From: Adineta vaga
Taxonomy: Eukaryota > Animalia > Rotifera
DNA length: 64,000 nucleotides
Direction of reading: 5' to 3'
NCBI GenBank assembly: GCA_021613535.1
Contig: CP075497.1
Location: 13,702,001 to 13,766,000 of the forward strand
The position numbers and the translations under genes are program-made. Positions 5,536 through 36,472 of this stretch are shown piece by piece. Every line of letters begins with the position of its first letter. The first letter of the stretch is position 1. The notes under the pieces are model-generated. The model ran no database searches and was not told where the DNA came from. It saw only the letters and a program-made list of their open reading frames with translations.

Positions 5536-6610
5536 TTAATCATATTGTTGAGAATCCATCTTCTGAAAAATAATTCGACAGTATTCCGCTGTTTCATCAT
5601 TATGATCATTTTTGTCAGATTGAACACAATCCTTGGAATAAGAAAGATTTTGAGTATGAGTTTCACAAAGCATGCTTTTCGTAAAATAACTTTTTTGTTT
5701 AATAATGAATTGATTATTTTTCATCATATTATCTATTGTTAAATATTTATTTTTATTTGATCCACACCAAAGAAAATATCCATTTGGGTGAAGTATACGA
5801 GAAATTTCGTAGGTCAATTCTTTCATTTTTTCTTCTTGAAAAAAGTTTTGATTTAAATCAATCCAAATGATAATATCAATCGATTGATTTTCAAATGGTA
5901 AATGTTGGTTATTTATATCAACAAATTGAAAAGATAATTGTGAAATATCTGAATATAATTTTCGACATAATTCAATAAAATCCAAAGAAAAGCTGATTCC
6001 AACATAAGAATAAGGTTTATAAGTTTTCACACACCAGTCAGCACCAACACCACGATCACAATTGATTTCAATAATATGTTGATTTCGAAGTGACAGATTG
6101 GAAATAACCTTAAAAAAATAAAAATCGATATTCAACTATAAGGGATGCAATAAATAACAGCCATTTTTTCGTTTTGACACGGATTTTTATTATCAAATGG
6201 ATGATTTTCGCATATATTGTATGGTATAAAAAAACAATGTAAAGAGAATGATCTCATTTAAATTTTCAAATAGAATTTTTTTGAAAATTCCATTGAATAT
6301 TTCAGTAACTGTGATTAACTACAAGTCACTGTGCTACTTTTAGTTATCTTAGCCTTGTATATGGTTACAAAATCTCTTCATTTTCTACTTACTTGTTCAT
6401 AGAGTCTTTTCAAATAACTATCATTATTCTCATCATCGAGATCTTCAGAACTAAAATTTAAAGAAAATATTGAATTGTTTAATTTCTTTAATTGAAAACT
6501 TCTTTTATACCGAGTAGACAATTTATTTGTAATCTTTGATTGAATTCTATGATCAATCGTATCATTATTAGCTAATACCGATTGAGTTGATATTGTTGTG
6601 ATAAAAGATT
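5536..6610 (-). CDS. Terminal two exons of the NRPS: linker plus class I SAM-dependent methyltransferase-like domain (degenerate)
   Basis: Spliced sequence EDLDDENNDSYLKRLYEQ|VISNLSLRNQHIIEINCDRGVGADW...YVGISFS...HLPFENQSIDII...EISRILHPNGYF resembles the Methyltransf_11 pattern (LEVGCGxGxG, LPFxDxSFD, RVLxPGG). It has no upstream start of its own and is joined by phase-compatible introns 6759-6611 and 6392-6109. Confidence 0.7.
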
Positions 6611-9600
6611 CTGAAAGAAAACTCTGATTCAACTCATTGGAAATAATAATCATTTTGGAATAATAACTGGGATTATTTTTCAAATGTTATTTTTTAAGGA
6701 ACTTTTGATAAAATATTCACTTTCGTGTTTCGAAATGTACAAATAAAAAAGAAACTTACTTGCAGGAATTCCTTTCCAATGAGTATTCAATGATAATTGA
6801 TCATTTTTCATTATCAATGTTAATGGATATAGACGATTATTACCCATTAATTTCGAACCAGGCATGACTATTGAACCACACATTAAAATACAATTATCAT
6901 TAACAATAACAGGAGATAATTTAAAAATACGTTGTTCAAAAGTATGACACTGAAAATGATTAGGAAAGAAAAGTCATTTTTTATTTGAAAAATTGGAATA
7001 AGAATCTTACAACAATAGCTGAATTCATTTGAAGTCGAACATTATCTCCAATTGTTAGAAAATCATAATCAAAAAGCGAATTTATTTCTGGTATAATAAC
7101 GTTTTTACCAATTCGAGCTCCAAATACTCTAAATAAACGGATCAACCATTGTGTATTACCAAGAAATGAACAAAGAAAATCGAAATGAATACGTGTACAT
7201 TTGTACATAATTTGATTTAATAAAATAAGTTGTCGAATTTTCAGTTTAAATTGATATAAAATCAAGACAATTATTGTATGAAGTATTGATCCAATGATAA
7301 AACCATTTGACGAATAAATTAATAATAAAAAATATTTAGTGATAAAATCAGATAAAAATATCGACCAAAATGGATTATTTTTAATTTGACCTTGTTCTTT
7401 AGATACGATTGGCATTTTAAATGGCATTGCTTGACCTGGTACTCCAATGAAAATATCATTTGAATTTGTTTTTGTATGACGAGAAATTCTTGTTAAATTT
7501 CCCACAATTGAATAAGATTTTAAATGACTACCGGGTAATATTGAACATTTATTACCTAGATTTGTAAAAGAATCGAATTGAATTTTATCAACACGATGTT
7601 CTCCTTGATTTGTTATTTCAGTTGGAATTAATAAAATATAATCAAATGTTGCTAAACCTTCGTATAATTCTAATAAGTTCGCTGGATAAGATAAAAATGG
7701 AATAATTTCACCAATTTGAACATCATTTTCAACATATGCACCTAAGAAACGAAGGATAATTGGATAAAATGGATCAAAACTAGTTGTTAATGACCAACAA
7801 TAACGAAAAGTTGTTACAATCAATTGACGAAACCATAGTTTATTTAAATAAGACCATGATCCAACTGAATAAATTTCACCAACATTACAAACTCCAACAA
7901 AATATTTAAGTAAAATTAATGAAATACAACAACCAAATAAAGACCATAAAAACCAGGAAAAAGCTAAAGAAATAAAGAAGGAGAAAGAAGAACTTAATAT
8001 TGAATGAATTTGATAAACAATCATCAATAATAATAAATGAATAAATATTAATAAAATCAATAAAATGATTTGATAGATATTTTGATAAATTGAAAATATT
8101 CTTTCGTTACTTGTGTTTGAAATATTAACTGAAGAGTTTTCGCCATCGATAATTGTATTTGACAAAATAAAACCAGTCACAGTTGACATTGGTTGAATAA
8201 TAATATTGTTTTCCAAAGAAGCTTTTCGAAATAATATTGATCTTGAACCAATTGAACAATTTGCCCCAATTTTTATTTGAAATAATTCAAATGTATTATT
8301 ATCATTATAATGTAAACAATTAAGAATTGTTTCTTTATCAATCCAAGTCCCACAATCAATCTCTAATAACCATGGTGCATCGATTGTTGTTGTATAAATA
8401 TGAGCATCACGATGAACTTTGGCACCACATGAGCAAAGATAATAATTATACAATGATGTTCCAAGAATATGTTGTAACCAAAAACTATTATTTGTCCATA
8501 AACGATCTAAGAAACACCATTGATAATACTTTAATGAGAAAACCTCATAAATGTGATTTTCTTTCAGTGAAAATAAATTTGAACAAATACAATAAAATAA
8601 AAGATGAATAAATGGTAAGAACGGTAAAAACAACCAATAACAATTCCGAATAATGAATAATATTGGTAATAACCATTGAAAAATTAAAAGTATGATACCA
8701 ATTGATTCGATTAGAAATGATGGGGAAAGATTAACTTTTATTGTATCATCATTCAGAGGCAAAGTAACTATCTTCTGTGATTTGGTAGAATTCAAGAGAG
8801 GTTCAATAACATTTGCTAATTGTCGAACTGAAGGATTATTAAATATAATATTTATATCGATTCTTTCAGAAATTCTTTCGCGAATCAATGTCACCAAATG
8901 AACTGCATGCAAAGATGTTCCACCAAATTCCATGAAAGGTATTCTTATAGATGGAGACTCAACATGAAAAACTTCTTCATAAATCTTTTGTAACTTATGT
9001 TCTAAACTTCCTAATGGAATATCATACTCAACTTCTATCCTAGATGAGACAACTTGGGGTGGTGGAAGACTTTTTCGATCAATTTTGCCGTTCGCATTCA
9101 ATGGAAATCTGTCAAGAATAATGAATATCGACGGAATCATATGTGGTGGAAGATGTGATTGACAATGATCACGAAGTTGTTGTTCATTCACAGATGAACT
9201 TTGGACATATGCAATCAGATAATCATCGTGCCATTTCATCACAACACAAGCTGAGATCGACGAAATGAAGAAAAGACATTGTTCGATTTCACCCAGTTCA
9301 ATACGTTGACCATGCACTTTCACTTGATGATCTTTTCGTCCTCGGTAATGAAGAAGACCATTGCCATCCATATGAACAAGATCTCCTGTTCGATAGAACA
9401 ACTCATCATTTACATAAATCAGTGCTTTTGCACTCAGGTCATCACGATGAAGATAGCCAGCGAAGACACCAGCACCACCAACGAACAATTCACCTTCTTC
9501 ATTCACAATGACTGATTGATGGAATTCATCGAATACCAAACATTGATATTGAGGAAGTGGTGAACCAATGGGAACACTTCTGTAGTCGTTCATCAGATTT

Positions 9601-11755
9601 AAAGAATATGTTGTACAACCGATCGTTGCTTCTGCTGGACCATAAAGATTTAATATACGGATGTCGAACATGTACACTTTTCTTAGGACATTCAGCAACT
9701 TTATGGAAAATGGTTCTCCTACGAAACAAGGATATGATTAGCTGTGCAGAGCAACAGGCGACTTTTTTCTCACTTACCACTGCTGCAAAGTGAACGTAGA
9801 TGGAATGAAACAACTGTATTGTTGCATTGTTTCATGTAATTGAAAAAACTAAATATCAAACTTGGTACCGAATGCATGTAGGTGATTTGTTTTTCTTGCA
9901 AGATTGTCCTTAAGTAATCAAAATCGAGTGTACCATGTGGATGAAGCATGACTAACGTTCCTCCAATCATCAGAATGCCAAGAATTTCTTGAACATGAAT
10001 ATCAAATGAGCACCGCGCCATTTGAACAGCAACATCCACGCTATTAAATGAATCAGTATTGGCTAAAGATTGAATACAATTAGCAAAGTTCTTTTGACGA
10101 ACTTGAACCTAAATACCAAATAATCATACTACCATACTCATAAAAACAAAGAAAAATAACCAACCGCTTTAGGTATTCCAGTTGATCCACTTGTAAAGAT
10201 GATGTAGGCGATGTTCTCTGATGAGATCGTCACATTCGATAGTTTGTGAACACCAATATCATCTTTGCTGGAATAGTCATTCATCAAGATCTCATCAATA
10301 TTCACAGACAGTTCACCACTCTCGATGCCAACAAACTTGTCTGATGTCAGCCAATGAACAAGAACAAGTCGACTGTGTGTTTGTTTAACAAGTGATTGCA
10401 AACGATGCTGAGGATCTCGAGGTGACAACGGACAGTATACACCGCCTACCATTTCGATCGCCATCATACCAATCACCTACAAATCAATCACATCCTTTTT
10501 CTTCGATCCACTCTCCGATATCACAATCACTCACCATTGTCATACTTCTTTCCACACATTGACAAATAATATCACCCACCACAATACACTTCTCTTCAAC
10601 AAAATGTAATGACACCATCTGAACAGAATGCAACAACTCTGCATATGTCAACGATTGTTCATCGAGTTCAACTGCCACTTTCTGTGGATGTGTCATGACT
10701 CGTTCGATGAATGCATGAGGAATACACTGATCACTAAGAGCAAGAGGAGCATCGGAGAATGGTGTCAGTTGTGTGTTGTTCTGTGCTTGCAGAAGAAGTC
10801 GATCATGAGGTAAAGACAGTGATAATTGAGGGATGGATATGTCTAGTAGATGAGTGCCATTGGAAGATGAAAACAGCCGATGTAACATGAGATGGAATCG
10901 TTGAGCTATTGTTTGAATCGTTTCACAAGTGAAGAGGTCAAGAGATGCATTGAGGGTGCAAGAAAAGTGATTTGTCGTTGGATCATGCATGAAACTAGCG
11001 ATGAAATCAAATTTACTCATAATTTCATTTTCAGTAATACGAATTGAGAATGGTATATAGGAGAGTCGACTATCTCCAATCGCTGTTTCATGCTGATCCG
11101 TTGCATCGACGAGAGAAGTGATGAACTCAAATGAGGTGTCGAGGAATGAAGGGTGTGAAAGATGAGGATGTTGATTGAGAATGTGTTGAAGTGGATAATA
11201 GGAGTATTTCAATGAGTTTGTTGCTCTTTCACATACGTGATGGATAAGTTGAGTCAATGACCAATGAACATCTAGTTGACATCGAAGTGGAATGGCATTG
11301 GCGAACATTCCAATGATTGAATTGAGTTCTGGTCGATATCGACCATGGACATTCGTTCCAATGCAAAGATCGTGTTGTCCATTGGTGATTTTGAAGAGGA
11401 AAAGAAAATAGAATGAAAGAATGAGATGTTCAAGCGAGATTTGATTTGTTGATGCATAGATGAGAAGTTGATGGGAGAGATGTGAGTCGAAATCAAAAGT
11501 GAGAGATGTTCCACGACCACTTCGATGTTCATTGGAAAGGCGATGTCGATCGTAGGGCAACGCCAGTGGTTGATGAAGTTGACAATGATGAAGTGTGTCA
11601 AGCCAGAAAAGACGTGCACCGGTCATTGACATTTGCTGTTCGATGACGGCATCTAGGAAGGAGAAATGTGGGGAAAGAAAATGAGCAAAGGAATAGAAGA
11701 GAGTGATATTTACAATCGAGATAACGAAGAGTAGTAGTAGTAGTAGTATCATCAT

Positions 11756-11786
<31 letters not shown>

Positions 11787-14700
11787 AGCATGTGAAGAGA
11801 GTTGACCTGTGACATATGCTTGATTGAGATCGTGTAGAAAGATGTCCATTGATGGAAAGTCAAACATTGCATGATGGAAGTTGAAGATAAGCAGATCTTT
11901 GTCCGACAAGAGACCATCAGATGAGATGTGATTGTGATAAACCAGATGACATCGAAAAACAAGTCCTTGAGCTAGATCAAACAGGTGAGGATTTCTCTTT
12001 TCTTCGAAGAGAATCTGTTGAAGTTGTTGATCGGTGTGATAGGTGCTGTTGCAGAAAGAGAAGTGTGGAGTGGGTGTTTTGAGTTGTTGCATGAGTTGCT
12101 GTGTGTGAGTGTCGAAGATGAGTGCTGTATGAAGGGATGGGTGTTTGTTGATGATGAGTTGGAGTGCAAGCGAAAGTTTGCTGGTTGAGAGAGAATGTTG
12201 AGGATGTAGACGATAGATGAATGGCATGTTGTAGATCGCCACTTGTGGATTGTCAGGATCGAAACGTACTTTTTCATCAAGCCAAATCCGTGCTTGCGCA
12301 TATGATGCTGGTGCTATAAGTTAGAAACTTGTGATCAACGGTAACTGATACGAAAGCGGATGGAGCTTATTTGAAAATTTGTTTATTGTTGGTCGGAGAT
12401 AAAGTGCAAGGGTTTGCGGTAGAGGAAAAGCGTATGTTTCAGACGGTTTAACGTAATTATGAAATTGGGAGAAGATGAGATGGAATGAATAGGACGCTCT
12501 GGATGCGGATAAGTTGGTATAAGAATTAAAAATCGCGAAAAATAATTATTGACTACTATTTTTTGAGAGTTTTTTGGGAACGACGAAGATAGAGTGTTAA
12601 AAAGTTGCAAATGATAAAAAGCGACGGGGAATTTTGAAAAATGATTAGAGCCAAGTGAAGTAGACTTGAGATCATAATCAAAAGGTTAAATTTTAATAAA
12701 AATGAGGCATTGGTTTCGATCAGTCTGTTTGTTCTTTCATGACTATGTTCAATTTGGATAGCTATGCAGAGTTTTTACCAAGTTGTGGATGTAGTTGTTT
12801 TGTCGGATTTTGATGTTTCATAGAGAGGTAGATGACAATATGCACGAACAACATTTATCGGGATCAATTCATTTGACACTCGACTGAATTAGTAATCTTT
12901 AGATGTCAAGATGAAAAATTGCTTGTTGTTTTCTAGGCATTCAGTCCCTGTAATAGCCACTAAGGTCAAACAATACGGACCGTGGTGTTAGTCCTGGGTA
13001 AGATCACCAAACTGTTCATAACACTTCCATATATACAGAGGAGGGTAGAGAACAGTTTGGTGGCTCCAAGGGGAGTGAAGGACAGAAGGTGACTGAGATT
13101 TAACTTAACTTCGATTAGGTTTTGTAGCGGGTAACTCCGCTAGTAGAAGATAGAATAATATTGAAGCGTGTCTTTCATAGAAAAACAAGAAACCTGTGTC
13201 CAAAAATCTTTCTTCAAGAATTATCTACACTTGTTTTCAGTCTAACGAAAACGAATTCGAAGAGCTTTGACTATAGTTCTTATTTATCGAGTGCTCCACG
13301 ATCGAAATCGCTGTCTGAATGGAATGCTAGACTACAAAGAACAGCTGTCGTCATATTTTCATGCTTACACATGTCTGTTTTTTCTCGACACAAGAATGAA
13401 TACCATGGAGTACACATAAGAGTATCTCCGAAACTGAACTTAAACCTGGTGGGCCTTTTACCTTTCAGTGCTATATGAAGAAACATACAAACGAACACGC
13501 AAATCACGTTTCTCATAAAACTCTCTTGTCAGTCGAGAGAATAAGTAAGAATAACTTTAATATCGATTATCGTTCAGCAGTGAGACTGTTTTTTCACATG
13601 CGTTTTTCGTTTATTTTCTGTTATACGTACTCTTTTTGATTTTTCTATGTATTACCGATCTTAAGTAAAAATTATACTAGAAAACAGCATACAGTAAAAG
13701 TAGGATTCTAAAAAACTCTACGCCATTCATTAGCATTTTATCAGATTCTAGAACTTCAGGAACTCGTTCTTTTCTCTCTGATATTAGTTCTAAAGAAAAT
13801 ATAGTAATGGATTCAGAGAGAAAAGATTTGTGGATACTAACTAATGAACCAGAGATGCGTAAATACAAATACAAACTGTACTGGACTTGATGTATATATT
13901 ATTTGTAAATGTGTACTCAGAAATCTATCCTATAGCTATTATTCATGTACTGTCATGCACTGATCCCACTTTGGATCTAAATCGTAGAATCGGTTGACTT
14001 GTACGCTCATGTATTGTTTCTACTTTACATCTGAAATCTAAAAATAGTTACCTTGTTCTAAAATGTTCAGTTAAAAATCAGGCCTGAATCAAAAAAAATC
14101 TATAAATATTGGTTCTCGTCTTCTGTTAAATATGGTGATCTACTTCGATGCTCCATCGTTCCATAAACTCAATCTGACATGAAATTCAAAATTCATAATT
14201 AACATTCTAACTAGAAATCGTTAGCGTGTATTGTAAAAAAACACCCAACTATCCTAGCGACTATCAAGAATTATCAAAATGTTTATTACATATCATCTTG
14301 CTCGATCCTGGTCGAGATGCTGTTCATCAGGTCTTCAAAGTATTTTTATTTTTTGCCATCTTGTTCGACTTGGACACAAACGCATCTATCAGTCAGTCTT
14401 TTCTCATCATATACCTAAGCTAGAGCCAGTACATGAGAATACATAAGATTACCTGGACGTACAAGCTAAACGATTCTAAGATATATACTCAAAGTATGGT
14501 CAGTACATAAGAAAATAGGCGAGTGCAGAGTGAACGAATCTGATATGGTTAAGTAAAAATAGTGTTGCACTATGTAGTATTTCTGGTATAAGAGTGACAC
14601 GTAAAGTACAGTGAAAGTTGTCCTCATATTTGCGCAGCCCTCTAATAAACTGACACTAGGACAATATAGCAGTCGACATTTATTATACGAACTGATTATT

Positions 14701-17700
14701 TATCGGACACTGCCTATACGGGAGTGGTAAAAGTAAGCATAGCTCTAAACGCAACCACATTTTTGTCTCTATATTTCTCATCTATATGAACCACGAGGAA
14801 TACCGATCAAGGCACGATAGTTGTAAATGATGATGCACGGAGAAATACAATAGTATCGTTTGCCGGTGCTGTATGCTAAGAAACTCACTGGAAAAAACCA
14901 AAAATATACGGTTTGGAATGCGGCAAATAAAGATATATACACAATCTTTATTTGTCGATCTGAACACAATTGCATAGACAAATCCTACGACTCTTAACTA
15001 CTGTATTTCATACTGATATTCCTCCTGCATTTAGCATTTGCATCATTTTCCTATGACCTCAATAGCTCTTCCACATGTACACTGTAAAAATATTGGTGTT
15101 TTACCGAGCTCATTAGGTTTCCTATACTTCCACCAATCGATTTTGATTTTAGTGAGATCGAGAAGGTTCGGCAGTGTTCAAAAAGTTCAGAATATTTTGA
15201 ATTGAACCACACATGGTTCGGTATGATCACTGAAGGTTTAGTGCAGTTTATTCGGAACGAATAATAAGTTGACAAATCCTTAAAAGCTTGACGAAATTTG
15301 TGCGAAACTCGTCGAGGTTTCGTATGTCAATTGGAGGTTCAGTCAATTCGATACCGATCGGCTTGCACTCTCGTAAAATTTGCACGAATCTTTAAAGGCT
15401 TCCAAAGTTCATAAAAATTTTAGCAACTTTATTACTAAAGTTGTGGTGGTTCTGTATATTATTTACTGGACCGTTGACAGCCCAATTACGTGTCTGAAGG
15501 TTCAACAACCTTCATGCGAAACCTTTTATCATCCGACTATTCATATGAAGGTTCTATTTATCTTCATATAACGAGTTTTGGTTTCGTACACTTCAACGTA
15601 GTTCGAAATAGCCTTTACGGAACCATCGATGGTTTCGTATTGTGGCTTAGGGTTCGGCGGATTTCATGCGAAACGACCGAAGAGTCTCGTTAATTCACTC
15701 ATGGTTTAGAAGAATTTATTCGAAACTGTCATGGGATTCGAACAGCGAGTAAAGGTTTGGTTCAGTTTTTCCGAAATTAACTATGGTTTCATATACTCAC
15801 CCATGGTCTAGCGAAACTATCAACGGTTTCTTCTCATCGCGCAAGGATTGGTACAGTTTCAGTCGAACTGTCTCTGCCTTTGGATATTGGTCGAAGATTT
15901 AAGAGAATTTAGGCTAAACTATCATGAGTTCTGTACGCTTACAAGTGGTTCAGTATAACTTTTTCGAAACGACTATCAACCTCGCAGAATGAGTGGAGGG
16001 TAGGCAAAACTTTTACTAAACCATTGACATCTGACACTAGTCCAGTTAACAAATGAGGAGGGCTCAGTGAAATATATGACTATTCATATGAGCGGATGTC
16101 CGCCATTCAATAGTCTGGCGAGCAGTTAGGTAAGTGATGGTTTGTCATAAATTACATCTTTTCTTCTTGACTGTTTAGAATCAATGTCAATAGGTTTTTG
16201 GATTGGTCAACGTCTACCCATGCCCTTAACAGTATTTGTCAGATTTGCAGGCGCCTTCGAAAAAAATCTTTGAAGAATGAATTATAAAGTGGCTGAATAC
16301 GGAGCCTCTAATATAATCATCAGAAAAGAGTATTCCACCAGACGAAAAGAAAGATCAATGCAGTGAAGGTTTCGCAGCTACAGGGTAGCACGAAACCTTT
16401 TTTGAGATAGATTCAGCGGGTTTTGTACGGCACCACTGGTGCGGAACCTTTGCTACGGAATCTCTGTTCTGAATTTTTCTGCTAAGGTTCTATCCGAAGC
16501 CTTCATTCGATCAAAACGAAAAACGATTTTTCCGTGTATCTGAGGGAAAATTCTTTTCTTTTTACAGTGTATATATTCCTTTTTTTTTCTTTAGTTGATT
16601 ACTTCTACTGATCCAAATTATTACCTTCGTTTATCACCTCACATTGTCGACTAAATAAAACATCATCAACTTCCCTTCTTTCTTCTGGTAAAACAATCTC
16701 AAATGCTGATATTGGAATCTCATATCCATTCTGCACCATCACTATGTCTTCTTCCGAAGAAAACACTTGTTCGAAGACATACTGAAATCGCACACCTATC
16801 TCTCGAACTGTGCTCTCATTAAATAAGTCAGAGACTGCAGTCAATGCACACGAAAGTTGACCATCTTTCGATGTTGTTGGATCATAGATGAAACGGAGTG
16901 AAAAGTCAAATTTAGCCACTTCAAATGAGTCATCTAGTGAGACATTCACCAGTCGTGCTTCGTCCAGGTTCAGTTCATTGACAGCAGATGAATCAGTGAG
17001 AAGAAAATCAAGCATTGTTTCAACAAGTGAAATATTAGAGTGATTGACATGACGAAGATCAGCGAGAAGATGCTGAAGTGGATAATGAGAATGCGGAAAA
17101 ATTGATAGACATTTGCATCGAACTTGTTGAGCAAGTTCATGAAATGACCAATGTGGATCAAGTTGAAGACGACAAGGTAATGTCGACACAAACATACCAA
17201 TCATCTGCTGTAATTCGGACCTATACCGATTCGCATTGATCGTAGCAATATACAGATCTGTTTCAAGATGAGATAATCGAAAAAGAAATAGATAGAATGT
17301 CGCTAAGGCAAGTTGAAAGAGTGTAAGATGATGATTGGATGCATAGTTGACAAATGCTGAACATGATTGCTGATCAAATGTAAGTGAAACAAACGATGCT
17401 GAGCCAGATCGTTGATTAATAGTTGATGATGCACGCTGTCTATCAGCAACTAAAAGCAGAGGATGAACTTGATGAAAAGTCAATCCATGTAGTTGTGAAC
17501 ACCAGAATCTCTGAGATAGAGTCATGTCGATGAGATGCTCATGAACTGAATAATCAATATATTGAAATGTTTCATCATCACCATCATCATTCAAGGTCAA
17601 AGAAGAAGTGTTGCTTTTTGAATAAGCGAGCGATAGATCACGAATGAAGATTGATGTTGAAGTGCCATCAAAGAATGCATGATGAATAGTGAACAAGATG

Positions 17701-20700
17701 AAATCGTTGACATTCAATAGATCATCATTATCAAAAGTGTCTGTTGATGAACGAGAACGGAGAACATGACAATTAATCACATGTCCATCGGATAAGTCAA
17801 ATAAGTTCGGTTGACTGATAATCTTCTTGATACTTTCATTTTCTCCACCATGAAGATCGATCATCGACAATCTACATGATTTCATATGGGAATAGTTCTG
17901 CACTAGAATTCCGTTCGTATTGAGATGAAGTGCAGTTCGAAGAATATGATGTTTTGCAATGACGTGTTGGAATGCATGATGTAATCGAGAGAACGATATG
18001 GGATGATTGAGAGATGAAATACGATATAAGAGTGGAATAGCATACATATTGTGATTGTTTGTTGGTGATGAGAAATGGATGTGATCATCCAAGAAAATAC
18101 GTTCTTGTGCATAGGATGCCTTTGCTAGAAAAAAGAGAAGAGTTATTTGTCGATAGTGTCTTAGGGTATGAAGTTTCTTACCTTCCGTCAGATGAAGTGA
18201 AAACCAAGTGGAATCATCTGTTGTGTGTGACATGTCGAGATTCTGTTGAATGGCCTGAGCATGATGAAAAATAGTTGGGTTTTGAAAAAGATCGGTGATA
18301 GAAAGTGATGAAGTTGAATGAAAATGAAATTCGGTTTTATATCGATGAAAGAGTTGTATCATCAGAAGAGAATGAGCACCGACTGAGAACAGATTGGTAT
18401 GGAGGGAGATGTTTTCCTGGTGAAACAAATCACAACAGATGCGATGAATGGCGATCTCAGTGCTAGTAGTCGGTAATTGTAGTTCACTATCACTATGAAT
18501 TTGTATAGGAGAAAGATGAGAAGAAGGAAGACTTTTTCGATCAATTTTGCCGTTCGCATTCAATGGAAATCTGTCAAGAATAATGAATATCGACGGAATC
18601 ATATGTGGTGGAAGATGTGATTGACAATGATCACGAAGTTGTTGTTCATTCACAGATGAACTTTGGACATATGCAATCAGATAATCATCGTGCCATTTCA
18701 TCACAACACAAGCTGAGATCGACGAAATGAAGAAAAGACATTGTTCGATTTCACCCAGTTCAATACGTTGACCATGCACTTTCACTTGATGATCTTTTCG
18801 TCCTCGGTAATGAAGAAGACCATTGCCATCCATATGAACGAGATCTCCTGTTCGGTAGAACAACTCATCATCCACATAAATCAGTGCTTTTGCACTCAGA
18901 TCATCACGATGAAGATAGCCAGCGAAGACACCAGCACCACCAACGAACAATTCACCTTCTTCATTCACAATGACTGATTGATGGAATTCATCGAATACCA
19001 AACATTGATATTGAGGAAGTGGTGAACCAATGGGAACAGTAGTGTAGTCTGTCATTGTGTTCAAAGAATATATCGTACTACCAATGGTTACCTCGGCTGG
19101 ACCGTAGAGATTACATACGTCATGGTTCGATTTTTCGAATTTTCTTAGGATGTCCACTAGTTTCACAACAAAAGGTTCACCTATGAAATAAGGATACGGT
19201 CGCGTATGCAAAAAACCAATACAGATTTTCTCACTTACCGCCACTCCATAGTGAGCGTAGATGGAATGAAACGTCGTTTCTTTTGACGTACTCATCAACA
19301 TACTTGAAGAAATCAAACAGTAAACTTGGTACCGAATGCATGTAGGTGATTTGTTTTTCTTGCAAGATTTTCGCTAAGTAATCAAAATCGAGTGCACCAT
19401 GTGGATGAAGCATGACTAACGTTCCTCCAATCATCAGAATGCCAAGAATTTCTTGAACATGAATATCAAATGAGCACCGTGCCATCTGCAAAACAATATC
19501 AATGTTATTGAATGAAATGATGCTAGTCAGCGATTGAATATAGTTAACGAAATTCCGTTGACGAACTTGAGCCTAAATACCAAATAATCATACTAACATA
19601 CTCATAAAAACAAAGAAAAATAACCAACCGCTTTAGGTATTCCAGTTGATCCACTTGTAAAGATGATGTAGGCGATGTTCTCTGATGAGATCGTCACATT
19701 CGATAGTTTGTGAACACCAATATCATCTTTGCTGGAATAGTCATTCATCAAGATCTCATCAATATTCACAGACAGTTCACCACTCTCGATGCCAACAAAC
19801 TTGTCTGATGTCAGCCAATGAACAAGAACAAGTCGACTGTGTGTTTGTTTAACAAGTGATTGCAAACGATGCTGAGGATCTCGAGGTGACAACGGACAGT
19901 ATACACCGCCTACCATTTCGATCGCCATCATACCAATCACCTACAAATCAATCACATCCTTTTTCTTCGATCCACTCTCCGATATCACAATCACTCACCA
20001 TTGTCATACTTCTTTCCACACATTGACAAATAATATCACCCACCACAATACACTTCTCTTCAACAAAATGTAATGACACCATCTGAACAGAATGCAACAA
20101 CTCTGCATATGTCAACGATTGTTCATCGAGTTCAACTGCCACTTTCTGTGGATGTGTCATGACTCGTTCGATGAATGCATGAGGAATACACTGATCACTA
20201 AGAGCAAGAGGAGCATCGGAGAATGGTGTCAGTTGTGTGTTGTTCTGTGCTTGCAGAAGAAGTCGATCATGAGGTAAAGACAGTGATAATTGAGGGATGG
20301 ATATGTCTAGTAGAGATGAGTGCCATTGGAAGATGAAAACAGCCGATGTAACATGAGATGGAATCGTTGAGCTATTGTTTGAATCGTTTCACAAGTGAAG
20401 AGGTCAAGAGATGCATTGAGGGTGCAAGAAAAGTGATTTGTCGTTGGATCATGCATGAAACTAGCTGTGAAATCAGCTTCACTTGTACACATATCGAGTG
20501 ACGGAGATATCAGCAAAAGTCGACTATTTCCAATCGCTGTTTCATGCTGATCCGTTGCATCAACGAGAGAAGTGATGAACTCAAATGAGGTGTCGAGGAA
20601 TGAAGGGTGTGAAAGATGAGGATGTTGATTGAGAATGTGTTGAAGTGGATAATAGGAGTATTTCAATGAGTTTGTTGCTCTTTCACATACGTGATGGATA

Positions 20701-21206
20701 AGTTGAGTCAATGACCAATGAACATCTAGTTGACATCGAAGTGGAATGGCATTGGCGAACATTCCAATGATTGAATTGAGTTCTGGTCGATATCGACCAT
20801 GGACATTCGTTCCAATGCAAAGATCGTGTTGTCCATTGGTGATTTTGAAGAGGAAAAGAAAATAGAATGAAAGAATGAGATGTTCAAGCGAGATTTGATT
20901 TGTTGATGCATAGATGAGAAGTTGATAGGAGAGATGTGAGTCGAAATCAAAAGTGAGAGATGTTCCACGACCACTTCGATGTTCATTGGAAAGGCGATGT
21001 CGATCGTAGGGCAACGCCAGTGGTTGATGAAGTTGACAATGATGAAGTGTGTCAAGCCAGAAAAGACGTGCACCGGTCATTGACATTTGCTGTTCGATGA
21101 CGGCATCTAGGAAGGAGAAATGTGGGGAAAGAAAATGAGCAAAGGAATAGAAGAGAGTGATATTTACAATCGAGATAACGAAGAGTAGTAGTAGTAGTAG
21201 TATCAT

Positions 21207-21247
<41 letters not shown>

Positions 21248-24200
21248 TGTGAAGAGAGTTGACCTGTGACATATGCTTGATTGAGATCGTGTAGAAAGAT
21301 GTCCATTGATGGAAAGTCAAACATTGCATGATGGAAGTTGAAGATAAGCAGATCTTTGTCCGACAAGAGACCATCAGATGAGATGTGATTGTGATAAACC
21401 AGATGACATCGAAAAACAAGTCCTTGAGCTAGATCAAACAGGTGAGGATTTCTCTTTTCTTCGAAGAGAATCTGTTGAAGTTGTTGATCGGTGTGATAGG
21501 TGCTGTTGCAGAAAGAGAAGTGTGGAGTGGGTGTTTTGAGTTGTTGCATGAGTTGCTGTGTGTGAGTGTCGAAGATGAGTGCTGTATGAAGGGATGGGTG
21601 TTTGTTGATGATGAGTTGGAGTGCAAGCGAAAGTTTGCTGGTTGAGAGAGAATGTTGAGGATGTAGACGATAGATGAATGGCATGTTGTAGATCGCCACT
21701 TGTGGATTGTCAGGATCGAAACGTACTTTTTCATCAAGCCAAATCCGTGCTTGCGCATATGATGCTGGTGCTATTTCGAAAGGGAGAGCTATCATAGTAA
21801 TGGAATGTGTTGCACTACTTTCGATGTAGATAAGGAAGGGCATCCACACTTTAACATTCTAATTAGTTAAAAGTATGTGTAGCAGTTTTTGTGTCATGTT
21901 TGTCTATGAGGTTAACTTTCATACTTTTGTAATGGAATCATTCTGGTTGCATAAGTAGCCATTTTGTAGAAAAGTTAATACCGAACAATTTTATCAATGC
22001 AGATGTTGCAGAATTTTCGGTGAAGAGATAGGTATAGGAGAGAGATATACCTATATCCCTATATTTATGTACCTCGATACTAGAACATGCATGTTGCTCT
22101 TGAAAAGCATCTCTTCAAATAATTCAAAAGTTACTTTAGGAATAAAGATGCAGACAAATTTGAATCTTACAAAGTTTAATTGTTGATGAGCTCAATTATT
22201 AAATATATTTTTTTATATTTTTGTGGACGCGAAACATTTACAATTTTGTTCAATTAATGCTGTATTTATTAGCAGTTTCAGCAGTAAATACTTCAAGGTA
22301 TCAATGTAAAAATATTTTTCAAAAATCTCCGATACTTGAATCTAGTATAAAAACGTTCATATAAGTGTTACTTTCACTGACATAGATATGGGGAGGTCTG
22401 AGGGTTACTATAATTGACAAACATTTGATATCTTCATCGCCATTCGACAGAATAAAATATTCTTTTTCGAAAAGTGAGGGTATATTCATACTCTCGATTT
22501 GTACGAACGAAATTATTAAAAATGTTTCCTAAGTATCACTATTGGCTGACACAAAAAAGTTTTGTTACTTCGATAGAAGAAGAGAAGCAACCTATTTGTC
22601 TATATTCTATACTATACCGGCCAAATCAGTTTAATAGAGACGTAACACTGTACAATTTCAATATATATATATATACTAGCGGGCGCTCCCGATGGTGGTC
22701 CAGAACCCTCGTAACTGAAAATGTCATATCTAAGAAAATCACAGTAAATGCAGGAAGGATTGTGCTTAAATTTTCCATCTGTCACGACTGCGTATCCCGC
22801 CACGTATTTCTGAGATAGAACAACTTATATTATATAGTATCCCAATATATTGTCTTCCCTACAGTTCTCGATGCAAAATCTCTTCTTTTTGTAACTGTTC
22901 ACACTAAAAAACCGTTTTTTAACTACTCCTGCTTCAAAATGCATTTTTCTTACAGATTATTCTGCCACTCTCTCAACTTCACTTTACACCTAAAAATCTT
23001 AGACTTACGACTAAAACTTCATCTATCGTGAACGCACATATGTTCACAATAAAGCTCGATAATCCAACGAATATTGTGTCGGGACGAGTGTCTTATTCCG
23101 GACTCACTCTTGCTTCCGTGTAACAGAATCAGATCAGTGCAAAAATGTAGTTACAGATGGACACTATAAAGATTGATCTAACGATTTTTTTTAAATTGTG
23201 TTAAAGTTCACCCACCTTCCATCTTCCATTATCTCTCAACTTTTTCCTATACACACGAAAGTGTCATAGACAGTTTGATCGCCTTAACTATGACATAACC
23301 ATCTGAGTGAAATTTCATCCAAACACTCCTCTTTTGATCCCTCTCTCTTGCCGTCCGTTGAGAATGTTAACCTTCGCTGAATTTATGAAAGTACCTATAA
23401 AAATTTAGTGACGGCACCTGTAATGGGAACCAAATTAATCGTATCAGAGGATGTGGGTGAAATTTTACCTACATCCCCTATATCCTCATCCACGGTAATT
23501 GTAGCTATTAGAGAGACTGAACGCATAGCAAACAAACAAACAAACAAAGTTTCTTCTTTATATATATTTATAGATCTGTAACAAACTTACTAAAATCCTG
23601 TCCTGAGAAGCTGTTGTTAAAATATTATCGTAAGTGGCGTGATAGTGGCAGCGTCAAGTAGAGGCTGAGAGACCTGAACCCTCATCCTCCGAAAATTGTT
23701 TGAAATCCTTCAGATTGTTAAGTCTTTGGTGAAATCTGATGACAAGGTTAAAAACACGATCTTACGACTGGGTCCCCCTCCCAGAATTTTTTGAAAGGGC
23801 CTGGTATCTCTCTAGGATGAGAATCCTAGCACCGCTTCTACTCACAGCTATATTTATTTACCTTCTATACCTACTGGTGTTTTATTTCTGTCAAATACTC
23901 ATTAATTATTTTTCTTAAGAAACTATTGAACCATAAGCAGAAAACAGAGTTACATACCATTTTCGATGATGTTCGTTAAATGAACAAATTTGATATTGTT
24001 TATTTCTTCAGATTCTTCAGAAAGAATCAATGATAACTCTCTGATAGGCTTCGTAAATGAATTCGCTTGCATCCTATTTGAATTTGTCGAAAATAATTGT
24101 GACGAAAAGTATTGAAATCGACGAGTCATTATTTGAACCGTTTCTTCATCACATTGATCATGGCAACAAAGAAAAAAACACGATAATCGGTTGTCATCAG

Positions 24201-27200
24201 ATGACGGGTTGTAAACAAATGTTACTAATAAGTCAAACTTATTTGCATCCTTTGATTGGTTTATAGTTTTTCGTTCCAAATTAATGTCACCCAATGTAAA
24301 ATGGTCTACTTCCGAAGATATTGTAAGAAAATTAAATATTACCCGAAGAAATAGAGCATTGGATTGATTCAAATGGAAATCAGTTAGAACATGTTGAAGC
24401 GGATAATGAGAATGTTCAAATATTGATACACACTTCTCCTGTACATGTTTAACAAACTCATCAAATGACAAATAAGGATTGATTTGCACACGATAGGGTA
24501 ATGTCGATACAAACATACCAATAAGATCCTGTAACTCATTTCGATATCGATTCGCATTAATACAGGAAATACACAAATCGTTTTGGCCAGATGTTAACTT
24601 GAATAAAAAAGTATAAAAAATAGTTAATCCAAGTTGAAATGGTGTGAGATGATTTGATGAAGCATATTTAAAAAAGTTCGTCAAGATCTCATCATCGAAA
24701 GATATACAGGTGGCAGAGGTAGTAGTATATCGTTGATCAGTTAATAGACAATGTCTGTCTTTTGGTAACGATAATGGACAATTTAAATCATAGTTTTCCA
24801 GCTGTTTCATCCAGAAATTCCGTGACGATGTCATATTCATTTGACGTTCATAGATAGAATAGTCAATATAGTGTAATCTATTTTCATTTTCAGGCAATAA
24901 AGAATTATTATTGTAAGCAATAGAAAGATCACGAATAAATATTGGTATTGATGTTCCATCAAATGCGGAATGATGAATACTAAATATTATTACATCATCT
25001 TTAGATAAAAAATCATCATTCGGAAGCGAAGAATGTCTAAGGTAAAAATGACGAAGAATATGACAATTAATAACATGTCCTTTTGATAAGTCAAATAAAT
25101 CCGGTTGACTGAATATATCATGTATCGTTTCATTCAGATCATAATCATCGACAACATTTATTACTGAAAAATTATGTGTTTTTGTTTCATCATTAATCAT
25201 ATTTGAATTCAAGCAATGTTGTATAATATCTCCACTACTATCGAGATAAAGCGAGGTGCGAAGAATGCTATGTTTCATAATAACCAAGCGAAATGCACGA
25301 TGTAATCGATTTATAGATAGACGATTGTTAACAGATGATATACGATAAAGTAATGGAATTAAATAAACATTGTTATTATTTATTGATGAAAAAGGAATTT
25401 GTTCATCTAAAAAGATTCGTTCTTGCGCAAATGATGCTCGAGCTATAGCAAAGAATGCAAATATGATATTTTACAATAGATTTTTGCTAATTTGATTTTA
25501 CCTTGAAGAAGATGTAATGGATGCCAAATATCTTCTACATATGGTTTCATATCAGTACTATCATAAATAAATTGTGAATGCCCAATAATTGTTGGATGTT
25601 GGAATATGGTACTCATTGGAACAGATTTGCTTTTTATATTAAATATTTTCCTATACTGACGATAAAGTTGCATAAGTATAAGTGAATGTCCACCCATGCT
25701 AAATATGTTTGTATCAATTGAAATTTCATCTTTTTCTAAAACATTGCACCATATCTTATGAATAGTCTTTTCAATTTCATTTCTGGGTGATAATATTTTT
25801 ACTTCATTTTGATGATGTGCAGTTGAAAGATGAGAAAAATCAGGTTGAGGAAGAAGGTTGCGATCTATTTTTCCATTTACATTCAAAGGTAATCTATCAA
25901 GAATAATAAATAATGATGGAATCATGTGCGGTGGTAAATTAACTTGACAATGTTTACGCAATTGACTTTCAGTCAAATTTGAACTTTGAACATACGCAAG
26001 TAAATGATCATCCTTCCATTTCACAACAACACACGCAGATATTGTTGTATTCAATAAACACCGTTCTATTTCTCCCAGCTCAATTCTTTGTCCACGTAAT
26101 TTGATTTGAAAATCTTTTCTTCCTTGATAATGAAGTAAACCGTTTTGATCAATTCGAACAAGATCACCTGTTCGATAAAATAATTCATTGTTAATGTAAA
26201 ATAATGCTTTTGCTGTTAAATCATCACGTTTAAAGTAACCAGTGAATACACCAACTCCTCCTATGTATAATTCACCCTCTTGTCCAATTATAACTGATTG
26301 TAAATATTCGTCCAAAATTAAACGTTCATAATTAGAAAAAGGTCTACCAATCGGAATACTACTTGAATCAGAAACTATATCAGTTAAATAAAATGTACTG
26401 CCAACTGCTACTTCAGCTGGACCATAAAAATTCCAGATATGGCATGTTTTTTCTACATGTGATCGCAATGACTTGATTAGTACTGATGGAACAGGTTCAC
26501 CTATGGTTTTGAAACAGAAATACTATTTTCGTTTTTGTTCGCTTGTCCATAGCACTTACCAACACAACAAATATTTCGCATTGCTGCCCAAGGAGAATAG
26601 CTGTTTTTCTTAACATGCGTAATTAAAGAATTAAGAAAAGAAGGAACTGTTTGCAGAAATGTAATTTGTTTATCTTGTAAAACATAGTCGAAGTATGTTA
26701 AATCCATATTACCATCAGGATGTAACATAATAATCGTAGATCCGCAAATTAGAGCAGATAGAATTTCACATAAATGAGCATCAAACGTTGAGTTAGAAAG
26801 TTGGACAATAGTATCATTTGTGTTCAATGCGCTAATCTCGACTAACGAATACACATAGTTCACAAAACTTTCATGTTTCACTTGAATCTAAAAAAGAAAA
26901 TATAAAATTTCAAACATGAATGAAAAAACAATTCGCAAGATACCGCTTTAGAAGTGCCAGTCGAGCCACTTGTAAATATGATATAAGCTATACTATCACA
27001 GGTACTTAATATATTAGATAATTGATTAATATTCGTAGGATTGATTTTCTCTTTATTAATCAATGTGGTATCAATATCTAACGTAATAATATCATTATGA
27101 AATATGTTCTTAGTTGAATGGTCAGTAAGAACCAAACGACTTTGAGCTTGTAGTACAAGTGTTGATAAACGGTGCTTTGGATCTCGAATCGATAATGGAC

Positions 27201-30200
27201 AATAAATACAGCCGACCATTTCGATTGCTATAATACCAATTATCTAAATATTATTTATATTTTCATTATACAAAAATTTTCGTCTGCCTATCGATACTAC
27301 TACGTGAAATAAGCTTACCATTGATATACTCCTTTCGAGGCATTGACTAATCACTTCACTTGAAGAGATATGATATTCATTGAGAAATGTCACTGCTAAT
27401 GACTGAGCACAATCTAATAATTCTGAATATGTTGAAGATTGTTCATCTAATTCAACAGCCAGTTTCTGTGGATTTATCATCGCTTGAAAAACAAATGTAT
27501 GATGAATACAATTCATTGGAGAATATGATATTTGTGTGTTATTCATAGATTGTGTCAGCAATTGTTCATCTGGTAATGTAAAGGATATTTCATTAATTGG
27601 CTTATTGATATGAGTATCGTTAGATGTAAACAATTGATTCAATATGGAATAGAATTGTTGTGCAATCTTATCCACTGTGTCCGCATCAAACAAATCAGTA
27701 GATGCACCGATCGTGCATGAAAGTTCATTTTGATGGACATCATACTCAACGCTAAGAATGAAATCAGATCGACTCATTAGTTCGTGTTCAGTAGCGTTTA
27801 TTGAGTGGGGCATCAACAGGAGTTCACCGTCACCAATGATTACTTTCTTCACTTTATCTCTTGCCATAAGTGATGTAAATGCAAATGACGTCTCGAGAAA
27901 TGCAGGGATTAATATATCAGGATGTTGAGCAAGAATATATTGAAAAGGAAAATAGGAATATTTTGTACTATTGATCATCATATCTTGAATGCGTTCAATA
28001 AATTTAGAGAAAAATGAATGAGGATCAATTCTACATCGTAAAGGAATAACATTGCCAAACATACCAATTATTAATTTCAATTCATCTCTATATCGTCCAT
28101 GCGTGTTCATTCCAATACACAAATCAGTTTCCCCATTCGTTAATTTGAATAAAAAAAGGGAATAAATGGCAAGTGTAAAGTTTTTGACTGACATATTAGT
28201 CAATGACGCATATGTCAGAAAGTGATGGGAGAGATATTGTCCAAAATTAAAAGAAACAGATTTTTCGCTGCCACTTCGGTATTCATTTGAAAGGCGCCGT
28301 CGATCGTATGGTAGCGATAATGATTGATTAAGTTTGTAATTAGAAAGCATGTCAAGCCAAAACATACTTGCACCAGCCATTGGCATTTGTTTTTCTATGA
28401 CAGTGTCTAAATGATGTCGAAAAAAAAGAGTACATGATGAGCGGAAAGTGTAACGAATATATATATTTACAATCAAGATAACGTAGAATAGTATCATCAT
28501 CGTTAGGCAGATGACCTGTTGTATATGCTTGATTAAGATCATTAAGGAATATTTTCATTGATGGAAAATCGAATAAAGCATGATGAAAGTTAAAGATGAT
28601 TACATCCTGATGAGAAAGAATACCATCAGAAGAAATTTGTTTGTAATAAATCAAGTGGCACCGAAAGACAAGGCCTTGCGCAAGGTCAAATAGTTGACTA
28701 TCATGTTTTTCCTTAGTTATTATTTCGTTGAATTGTTCATCGTTCTCGTAAATACTCTGAAGAAATGTAAATAACTGTTTTTTGTTGCCATTGAAATCAA
28801 TAACTCGTTGAATGACTTGATTAGTTTGTTTGTTAAATACCAGTGATGTTCGAAGTGTCTGATGTTTGATAATAATTTGATTGAGAGCATATTCAAGTTG
28901 TTTAGTTGATAATGTATGATTGCATGAAAGTTGATAAATGAATGGTAAATTATTGATCGCTGTATAGTTTTCATCATGATTGAAACGCAATCGTTCATCG
29001 AGCCATATGCGAGATTGACTGCAAGATGCCGGAGCTATAATCGTTAGAAATGAGTTAGCCAGAACTGTATAGAAATATGGTAAGCAAGTTGCGTGAAGAT
29101 AAAAAAACAATGGACTTCACCTAAACTTCTTATAGTTTTGTCCACTGTCGTTTTTTAGTAGTCAGTGTGTTCTTTGTCAAAAATATCAATTCTAACTAAC
29201 GAATTTCGACTGACGAATTCTACGGATACGCCGAAAATCGGACCAAATCTATACCGAATTAAGTCTATTGATTTGGATTGTTTGATCTGAGACAGTTGAC
29301 GAAATCATTGCACAAACTAGGAAAGTTCAATGAGATTTTCATTGAATGGCTCCACATACCGTTACCTCCTTCAGTGATGATCTCTTATTGATTGAAGAAT
29401 TTCTCAGCTTTTGCATTATTCAGTTTAGTTATAAAATAGTATTTTTATATTTGGATTTATGTCATTTCAGCATCGGAAAAAGTTAGTACCTTCAAACACA
29501 CGGATATGCTCAATGGTTCTGGACTCGAAATTTCATTCTTTCAGATCATCAATCGAAAGATATGGTTCATAATAATGGACTCAAAAATGCGGATGGTCAT
29601 CCCATTAAAATGCTTAGGGCGTACCAAAAGCACGAGCAGTGTCAGTCCAATACCGTGTATTAAGCTTTAAGAAACCTTCTTTATATACAATCTGACAGAG
29701 AAAAGAATGCTCTATCTTACACGTATGCGTCACGGTTGTACGAGTGGTAATGAGTATTTTCTGAATGACTTTTGATAAAAACAAGATAAAAATCCATCAA
29801 GTCATATATCCCGCGTTTTTTTCGCCTCGTTTCTTTGAAGTTTTCTGTTTATCGTTTTTAGAATAGACATAGTTGATAAGTTATGTACACTAAATTTTTG
29901 ATTATCAAATATAAAATCGAACTACTAACTGAGAACCTGTGAATTGCGGAAGACCGTCGTGGTTGATACGTAGGGATGTACCGAGACTGTCGGCCCAAGT
30001 GAGGTCGATCTGAAAAAGTGTCAGTTGGGTTCAAAATCAATTTTGGCAACTTTGAGTCATGATCAGTAAAACTTGGATGGACGAGGGCCTTGATACATCC
30101 TAATGATATGTATTTTAATTGGATCTCTGACAGAATTTTTTCGAAAAAGCTGTGAAGATGTTCATTTTATGTTTTTTTCTCTGTTGTAAAAAACCCCTTC

Positions 30201-36200: not shown

Positions 36201-36431
36201 TCGATGTTCATTGGAAAGGCGATGTCGATCGTAGGGCAACGCCAGTGGTTGATGAAGTTGACAATGATGAAGTGTGTCAAGCCAGAAAAGACGTGCACCG
36301 GTCATTGACATTTGCTGTTCGATGACGGCATCTAGGAAGGAGAAATGTGGGGAAAGAAAATGAGCAAAGGAATAGAAGAGAGTGATATTTACAATCGAGA
36401 TAACGAAGAGTAGTAGTAGTAGTAGTATCAT

Positions 36432-36472
<41 letters not shown>

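What the first reader, a model, noticed from the sequence alone, without database searches (positions are those of the whole stretch)
6760..9010. Multimodular NRPS terminates in an epsilon-poly-L-lysine-synthetase-like membrane domain instead of TE/R
Seen: after T5 (GGTSL) come about 630 aa with three TM-plus-hexapeptide-repeat units ending in the HTFEQR...WKGIPA signature, and there is no TE or reductase domain. Known: this domain (Pls/PosA type, NRPS terminal domain TIGR02353) is characterised in single-module A-T-TM bacterial enzymes that polymerise amino acids through isopeptide bonds. Inference: here it may ligate or oligomerise the assembled acyl-peptide onto an amine acceptor at the membrane, a hybrid of templated and polymerising NRPS chemistry.
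Basis: partly seen in the sequence, partly recalled or inferred. Interest (0 to 1): 0.88.

Follow-up and report, generated by a model that had tools for sequence, protein, structure and literature searches.

The report
Rotifer peptide synthetase with membrane tail
A bdelloid rotifer's five-module peptide assembly line ends in a membrane domain of the type bacterial poly-lysine synthetases use, followed by a methyltransferase, instead of a normal release domain; a 2024 supplement lists this locus and both domains, but no paper I found explains or tests how such a line releases its product.

Summary
Real, with one correction. The window is Adineta vaga chr6. A PKS (55685-47038) precedes a 31-exon NRPS (46774-5536, 8,781 aa, five A-T modules, no TE/R). 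After T5 comes a ~646-aa Pls/PosA-type domain: TIGR02353 E 4e-27 (95 bits, cut-off 423); AlphaFold gives three TM hairpins plus three beta-helices; the 56%-identical A. steineri homologue matches Pls/PosA models at TM 0.86-0.90. It is not the end: two more exons add a SAM methyltransferase, eroded here, with an intact SAM motif in one A. steineri homologue. A module-4 frameshift is most likely an assembly error. No RNA junctions were seen. It is not a homopolymer synthetase: multi-module, A5 resembles the upstream modules, pocket lacks the diamino-acid Glu. Most likely (55%, inferred) the tail releases the finished chain in one acyl transfer at a membrane via a conserved His. At least nine multi-module A. 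vaga loci end this way, and so does the infection-induced g48151 cluster; so do a bacterial and some protist-like NRPSs. Nowell 2024 Suppl. Data 9 lists this locus ('NRPS_term; AdoMet') without discussion. The scan already noted the same tail at other loci of this genome. New variant; chemistry untested.

The parts
47038..55685 (-). PKS gene, 4 exons, 2,758 aa: KS-AT-DH-(long linker)-ER-KR-ACP-degenerate TE-like tail without GxSxG; stop TAG at 47040-47038; probably a separate gene that supplies an acyl starter
   Evidence: Pfam; splice search; open model with intact KS/AT/KR/ACP motifs; junction
42279..46774 (-). NRPS start and module 1: ATG 46774, starter C (HHxxxD), partial second C, A1, T1
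33412..42220 (-). Module 2: C-C-A2-T2, with a 3.7-kb phase-1 intron (40732-36996) between the two C domains that holds a broken mariner element
25502..33349 (-). Module 3: C-C-A3-T3 (the divergent module, A3 55% identical to A5); 2.9-kb intron at the same C|C position
18300..25442 (-). Module 4: C-C-A4-T4; 2.2-kb intron at C|C; 2-nt insertion near 20312 that shifts the frame in this assembly only
   Evidence: short-read contig at about three-copy depth lacks the 2 letters; no contig shows them
9050..18300 (-). Module 5: C (HHxxxDG) - 4.3-kb phase-1 intron 16624-12314 - C (HHxxxDF) - A5
8808..8996 (-). T5 carrier domain, GGTSL (Ser for phosphopantetheine)
   Evidence: Pfam PP-binding; four-helix bundle in model
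7011..8740 (-). Pls/PosA-type domain, main exon: TM1-2 (about 8705-8573), beta-helix 1, TM3-4 (about 8102-7907), beta-helix 2, shortened TM5-6 (about 7380-7244), start of beta-helix 3
   Evidence: TIGR02353; hydropathy; AlphaFold
6760..6949 (-). Pls/PosA-type domain, second exon: CHTFEQR (conserved His, Glu, Arg, Lys) to WKGIPA
6393..6610 (-).
   Evidence: donor/acceptor; homologous exon in A. steineri; public model P0001
5536..6108 (-). Last exon: class I SAM methyltransferase, SAM motif eroded (CDRGVG), stop at 5538-5536
   Evidence: NF045823 E 1e-19, NF045825 E 8e-19 (below cut-offs); Pfam Methyltransf_11 E 9e-10

Best explanation
One intron-bearing NRPS (starter C, five A-T modules) builds a pentapeptide, probably N-acylated with the chain from the adjacent PKS (inferred). 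The finished chain on T5 is handed to the Pls-type domain, a single-chain pseudo-trimer of left-handed beta-helices held at a membrane by three TM hairpins. This domain works like LpxA/LpxD-type acyltransferases, which take a pantetheine thioester: the conserved His of repeat 3 would activate an amine or hydroxyl acceptor (a small or lipid amine/alcohol, or a group on the chain itself), and the chain is released in one acyl transfer. The domain thus replaces TE/R. The C-terminal methyltransferase would be a tailoring add-on on the cytosolic side and looks to be decaying in this copy. Shown: gene structure, domain identity, predicted fold, conserved residues, spread of the layout. Inferred: catalysis by the His, single turnover, the acceptor, the PKS link, the product.
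For: Open 8,781-aa model with GT-AG introns; the four long introns sit at one homologous phase-1 site. No TE/R after T5. Fold: T + 3x(TM hairpin + beta-helix), TM 0.86-0.90 over 738 aa to Pls/PosA clusters (A. steineri homologue), PDB neighbours are beta-helix acyltransferases such as QdtC, LpxA, LpxD. H-x-x-E-x-R-x-x-K is kept in 20-22 of 22 canonical-type tails and in all six bdelloid tails aligned; the His is also kept in non-rotifer multi-module tails inspected. At least nine multi-C loci of A. vaga end in this tail. An A. steineri gene model of 6,162 aa has four modules + tail + methyltransferase, collinear at 49%. An intronless bacterial A-T-C-A-T-tail lies next to a PPTase gene. In Pls the tail forms the peptide bond from the T-bound unit (PMC4668381, PMC10522769).
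Against: No biochemistry, no product, no solved structure of any such tail. The His role is inferred from conservation, and I could not inspect model coordinates. The Gln two residues before the His, conserved in canonical tails, is Val here (also Val in P0163). The TM5-6 hairpin is much shorter than in Pls. RNA contigs gave only scraps at depth 2-6 and no splice joints. The public annotation splits the last part off as its own gene (P0001).
Confidence: 0.55

Rival explanations
1. The tail hydrolyses the thioester (water as acceptor) and the fused methyltransferase caps the free carboxylate as a methyl ester.
For: Best NCBIfam neighbours of the methyltransferase are O-methyltransferases of fatty acids and phthiotriol lipids. 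The tail-MT fusion is conserved in A. steineri, with an intact SAM motif in P0163. A second, unrelated SAM-fold domain follows the tail in P0017.
Against: Most tails have no methyltransferase. Scores are far below cut-offs. Characterised Pls-type tails make amide bonds. The MT here is eroded (34-36% identity against 56-58% for the tail).
Confidence: 0.15
2. One reading: the tail oligomerises the assembled units (or the last amino acid) iteratively through isopeptide bonds, a templated-plus-polymerising hybrid.
For: Same fold and conserved motif as Pls/PosA; membrane hairpins kept.
Against: Pockets read D-T-Q, D-T-Q, D-A-C, D-I-Q, D-I-Q at positions 235/236/239; none has the Glu needed for diamino acids in homopolymer synthetases. 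A starter C and adjacent PKS suggest a capped N-terminus, so no free amine for the next round. Bdelloid tails form their own clade apart from canonical tails, which A. vaga also has in two copies.
Confidence: 0.12
3. The tail is now only a membrane anchor or export aid (release by a trans-acting enzyme), or this particular copy is decaying.
For: Only 95 + 52 bits against a 423-bit cut-off; longest end branch in its subclade (0.56); Gln-to-Val change; eroded MT; transposon in an intron; very little RNA.
Against: His, Glu, Arg, Lys and the terminal W-x-G-x-P-A are kept across bdelloid tails that are only 30-56% identical; 8,781 codons are open; Nowell et al. report such genes barely expressed until induced.
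Confidence: 0.1
4. Module 5 plus tail is a separate C-A-T-tail-MT gene, as the public model P0001 has it.
For: 4.3-kb gap at 16624-12314; P0001 starts with a short separate first exon; single-module C-A-T-tail models exist (P0005, P0007); no RNA joint seen.
Against: The upstream C exon ends in a phase-1 donor that fits the acceptor at 12313, as at three other modules. Without the splice the upstream gene would end on a bare C domain. P0001 also skips A5-T5, so it is a poor ab initio model. P0163 and P0016 are single multi-module models ending in the tail. Nowell's curators call the cluster intact.
Confidence: 0.08

Closest known systems
Pls / PosA / PDAP synthetase (cationic homo-poly-amino-acid synthetases; TIGR02353 terminal domain; PMC10522769, PMC4668381)
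   Same: T domain followed by three TM pairs and three beta-helix domains; conserved HxFExR..K and W-x-G-x-P-A in repeat 3; no TE.
   Different: Five modules with C domains instead of a lone A-T; A domains of the bdelloid multi-module type without the diamino-acid Glu; tail only about 20% identical, below the HMM cut-off, third hairpin shortened; followed by a methyltransferase; intron-bearing animal gene.
Bdelloid NRP/PKS clusters of Nowell et al. 2024 (PMC11258130), cluster 6.7 = this locus; g48151 = paralogue
   Same: The same locus: region6.7, 13707536..13757685, 'intact', 11,508 aa, extra domains 'NRPS_term; AdoMet'. The infection-induced g48151 model contains a paralogous tail.
   Different: The main text has no hit for thioesterase, transmembrane, polylysine, termination or release; its product prediction for g48151 (cyclic heptadepsipeptide) does not mention the tail. 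They generally assume PKS and NRPS are co-translated; here a stop and weak donors suggest two genes.
Left-handed beta-helix acyltransferases (LpxA, LpxD, QdtC, maltose O-acetyltransferase)
   Same: Beta-helix fold (Z up to 14.9); they transfer acyl groups from CoA or ACP thioesters to OH or NH2 acceptors (established knowledge).
   Different: They are soluble homotrimers with three sites; here one chain, membrane hairpins, and the His motif only in repeat 3.
Ebony / Sm-NRPS C-terminal domain and terminal C domains (from memory, not tested)
   Same: Animal A-T enzymes whose last domain releases the T-bound unit onto a free amine.
   Different: Different fold, soluble, single module.

Membership tests
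Pls/PosA terminal domain (TIGR02353) | Score above the curated cut-off (423 bits) | tested here: not met
   94.7 and 52.4 bits for the two exons, E 4e-27 and 3e-14; two other A. vaga loci pass at 513 and 508 bits
Pls/PosA terminal domain (TIGR02353) | Six TM helices in three pairs | tested here: met
   Five clear hydrophobic segments by hydropathy; three helical hairpins in both models; TM5 is weak
Pls/PosA terminal domain (TIGR02353) | Three tandem beta-helix domains (C1-C3) | tested here: met
   Models; Atlas TM 0.86-0.90 over the full length for the A. steineri homologue; all predicted models
Pls/PosA terminal domain (TIGR02353) | Conserved repeat-3 motif QxHxFExR..K and terminal W-x-G-x-P-A | tested here: met
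   His, Glu, Arg, Lys, Trp, Gly, Pro, Ala kept; Gln replaced by Val
Homo-poly-amino-acid synthetases (Pls, PosA, PDAPs) as enzymes | Single module A-T-tail, no C domain | tested here: not met
   Five modules, nine C active-site motifs plus one partial C
Homo-poly-amino-acid synthetases (Pls, PosA, PDAPs) as enzymes | A-domain pocket with Asp and Glu at code positions 1 and 3 | tested here: not met
   A5 reads D-I-Q; no module has Glu there (criterion from PMC10522769)
Homo-poly-amino-acid synthetases (Pls, PosA, PDAPs) as enzymes | Makes an isopeptide homopolymer | not testable with these tools
   needs enzyme assay
Canonical multimodular NRPS | Repeated C-A-T modules with intact core motifs | tested here: met
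   (two C domains per module)
Canonical multimodular NRPS | Terminal TE, reductase or C domain | tested here: not met
   no such hit after T5
Canonical multimodular NRPS | Modules and terminus on one transcript | tested here: inconclusive
   open spliced model and homologous single models, but no RNA joints
Left-handed beta-helix acyltransferases | Catalytic His at the interface of adjacent beta-helices | not testable with these tools
   His conserved; model coordinates not available for inspection
Class I SAM methyltransferase | Profile match | tested here: met
   Pfam Methyltransf_11 39.6 bits, above cut-off
Class I SAM methyltransferase | Glycine-rich SAM motif I | tested here: not met
   EINCDRGVG here against EVGCGRGAG in A. 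steineri P0163

The most novel reading that the evidence does not exclude
The Pls-type domain is an unrecognised class of NRPS chain-release domain: a membrane-embedded beta-helix acyltransferase that off-loads templated lipopeptides onto a membrane lipid or amine acceptor (or oligomerises them), used by many bdelloid assembly lines including the one induced by fungal infection, so their products are not the macrocycles predicted by standard tools.
Probability: 0.35. Interest if true: 0.82.

Novelty: new variant of a known kind. Interest (0 to 1): 0.57.

Why it matters
In the papers I could read, every characterised Pls-type tail sits on a lone A-T and makes a homopolymer. Its use as the end of templated, multi-module lines implies a release chemistry that I found described nowhere. 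It also bears on a published hypothesis: the infection-induced rotifer PKS-NRPS g48151 carries this tail, so its predicted cyclic product was drawn without mention of the domain that probably decides the product's C-terminus. The T5-tail unit (about 740 aa), or the intronless bacterial two-module version P0075, is a tractable test. The locus itself is already catalogued, and this copy adds mainly the tail-methyltransferase fusion.

Tried and rejected
PDB sequence search with the tail: no hit; fold searches found no full-length solved relative. Paper searches for TIGR02353 and RxLGxxIG: none; searches for a multi-module Pls tail or rotifer Pls: nothing on point. Hamano 2014 not held, so the free-acceptor mechanism of Pls is from memory. 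Short peptides of this locus are not in the g48151/g23567 files, so it is neither gene. Pseudogene by the module-4 frameshift: rejected as most likely an assembly error. Collapsed or inflated repeats: rejected, short-read depth fits 3-4 real copies. End at WKGIPA(IP*): rejected, stronger acceptor and conserved introns. PKS-NRPS fusion: only atypical donors found; left open, two genes favoured. The hhalign comparison is partly circular and not relied on. More genome DNA around paralogues could not be fetched, so module counts there rest on C-domain positions (lower bounds). P0163's contig could not be looked up. A long-protein search with P0081's tail found only itself, so frequency outside rotifers is not measured. 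The joined spliced model was built only in local scripts; remote searches were made exon by exon by reference, and the full tail was folded from the A. steineri homologue.

Full report
Identity. The window is G000:C6:13,702,001-13,766,000 of a 100.8-Mb, six-contig genome. A protein from this locus is UJR38884.1 of Adineta vaga, and the contig length equals Chrom_6 in Nowell et al. 2024. The locus lies 135-185 kb from the chromosome end.

Gene structure. All relevant frames are on the minus strand. A four-exon PKS (KS-AT-DH-ER-KR-ACP, 2,758 aa, 55685-47038) ends in a degenerate TE-like stretch and a TAG. Only atypical donors precede that stop, and the next ATG (46774) sits about 30 residues before the first C motif, as in the NRPS model P0016. 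I favour two genes (about 70%, inference); in A. steineri a KS 74% identical lies just downstream of the tail-bearing gene instead. The NRPS has 31 exons with GT-AG introns, mostly 56-75 nt. Four long introns (2.2-4.3 kb) all fall in phase 1 between the two C domains of a module. The spliced model is open for 8,781 codons: C-C'-A1-T1-(C-C-A-T)x4-tail-MT. It needs one correction: module 4 has a 2-nt insertion near 20312 that modules 2 and 5 lack. In a short-read run of the same species label, the only contig there, at about three times single-copy depth (232 against about 85), lacks the two letters. Contigs can drop variants, but this points to an assembly error. Depths also fit three to four true copies of the near-identical module blocks. 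RNA-like runs gave only short pieces at depth 2-6 and no splice joints, so transcript contiguity is not shown.

The observation. T5 (GGTSL at 8924) is followed by about 646 aa that match TIGR02353 (94.7 bits for the main exon, 52.4 for the next; cut-off 423), with no TE or reductase. AlphaFold on the window's exon gives a carrier domain and three units of helical hairpin plus beta-helix (pLDDT 91.8). The complete T-tail of the A. steineri homologue (tail 56% identical) folds the same way (pLDDT 92.7, pTM 0.91) and matches Pls/PosA clusters at TM 0.86-0.90 over 738 residues. This is the layout modelled for PosA by Patel et al. 2023 (PMC10522769). In the PDB only parts match: beta-helix acyltransferases and carrier domains.

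The correction. WKGIPA is not the end. A consensus donor follows at 6759, and two further exons (6610-6393, 6108-5536) add 263 aa with a class I SAM methyltransferase. The public model also runs from the tail into the methyltransferase. A. steineri homologues have the fusion with the same three intron positions, and one 6,162-aa model has four modules, tail and an intact MT, collinear with this protein at 49% over 6,396 columns. The window's MT has lost its glycine motif and is 34-36% identical to those homologues, against 56-58% for the tail. It is the only clear copy of this MT in the genome; a remnant follows the tail at C3:234.6 kb.

How common. A. vaga has about 17 loci with this domain. 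Two pass the cut-off and group with canonical tails; the assembly-line tails form a separate, fully supported bdelloid clade (quick tree). At least nine have several C domains directly upstream on the same strand. One (L004) is inside gene model g48151, the PKS-NRPS induced by fungal infection. Outside rotifers, a representative search found multi-module proteins with the tail in a Pseudomonadota MAG (A-T-C-A-T-tail, intronless, beside a PPTase), Mastigamoeba (two A domains) and two eukaryote-like contigs. Their tree positions are long branches and give no donor.

Mechanism. Across 22 canonical-type and six bdelloid tails, repeat 3 keeps H-x-x-E-x-R-x-x-K and W-x-G-x-P-A; the preceding Gln is Val here. 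The His persists in the non-rotifer tails inspected. Beta-helix acyltransferases move acyl groups from pantetheine thioesters to amines or hydroxyls, often through a His (established knowledge), and in Pls the tail makes the amide bond from the T-bound unit. A5 is 83-85% identical to A1, A2 and A4 and 31-34% to A domains of single-module Pls-type proteins. No pocket has the Glu that Patel et al. find in all homopolymer synthetases. With a starter C and an adjacent PKS, the chain probably has a capped N-terminus (inference). The simplest reading is one-step release of the finished chain onto an acceptor at a membrane (55%). Hydrolysis plus carboxyl methylation (15%), oligomerisation (12%), anchor-only or decay (10%) and a separate last gene (8%) remain. 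None of these is tested; the acceptor and product are unknown.

What is known. Supplementary Data 9 of Nowell et al. 2024 lists this exact locus as region6.7, 13707536..13757685, 'intact', 11,508 aa, with 'NRPS_term; AdoMet'; my PKS plus NRPS total 11,539 aa. The main text does not discuss the tail. Patel et al. noted metazoan homologues but limited their network to 1,100-1,800 aa. Suring et al. 2023 do not mention it. I found no paper on a multi-module line with this end; subscription journals are mostly not covered. The scan has 13 earlier notes with these words, those shown being other loci of this genome.

Verdict. A real, apparently intact, already catalogued locus. It works like a Pls-type acyl-transfer domain but is not a member of the homopolymer synthetase family. 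New variant of a known kind, interest 0.57: the release chemistry is open and testable, while this copy is one of many and adds mainly the methyltransferase fusion. The joined model was not sent to any remote search; exons were searched by reference.

Noticed in passing
G000:C5:699904-701703 (L004): The paralogous tail lies inside gene model AVAG|g48151, the fungal-infection-induced PKS-NRPS of Nowell 2024, whose product was predicted as a cyclic heptadepsipeptide with no mention of the tail; a P450-like ORF follows.
   Followed up: partly
window 20310-20313: 2-nt insertion that frameshifts module 4 in the assembly; absent from the short-read contig there, so probably an assembly error.
   Followed up: yes
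window 46774-9050, every module: Each module has two C-like domains in tandem (first HHxxxDG, second HHxxxDF), with the long introns between them; the role of the second is unexplained.
   Followed up: no
window 9064-12317, 18525-21774, 33752-36999, 42622-45190: 2.6-3.3-kb module blocks 88-97% identical including introns: recent duplication or gene conversion; A1 and A2 are identical proteins.
   Followed up: partly
window 1986-2873 (-): NNMT/PNMT/TEMT-family amine methyltransferase gene fragment about 2.7 kb downstream on the same strand (Pfam E 3e-16); possible tailoring gene.
   Followed up: no
window 39426-40502 (-): Mariner transposase (HTH_48 + Transposase_1) interrupted by a stop, inside the 3.7-kb NRPS intron.
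   Followed up: partly
window 56696-58836 (+), 60471-62225 (+), 63064-63945 (-): Broken endonuclease/reverse-transcriptase element and two DDE_3 transposase ORFs upstream of the PKS.
   Followed up: no
window 47041-47500 (-): PKS ends in a TE-like remnant without the catalytic motif (no Pfam hit); the ACP-plus-remnant stretch has about ten paralogues in the genome.
   Followed up: partly
L001, L002 (G000:C1:11.88 Mb and 0.88 Mb): Two canonical-type Pls-like genes that pass the TIGR02353 cut-off; candidates for a real animal homopolymer synthetase.
   Followed up: partly
G000:C6:13.59-13.69 Mb (L005, L021): A second PKS-NRPS with the same kind of tail converges on this one, tail to tail, about 20 kb away.
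   Followed up: partly
P0075 / L029; P0044 / L028; P0081 / L030; P0017: Other uses of the tail: bacterial A-T-C-A-T-tail next to a PPTase; formyltransferase-A-T-C-A-T-tail; ACBP-led two-module tail; tail followed by a spermine-synthase-like SAM domain.
   Followed up: partly
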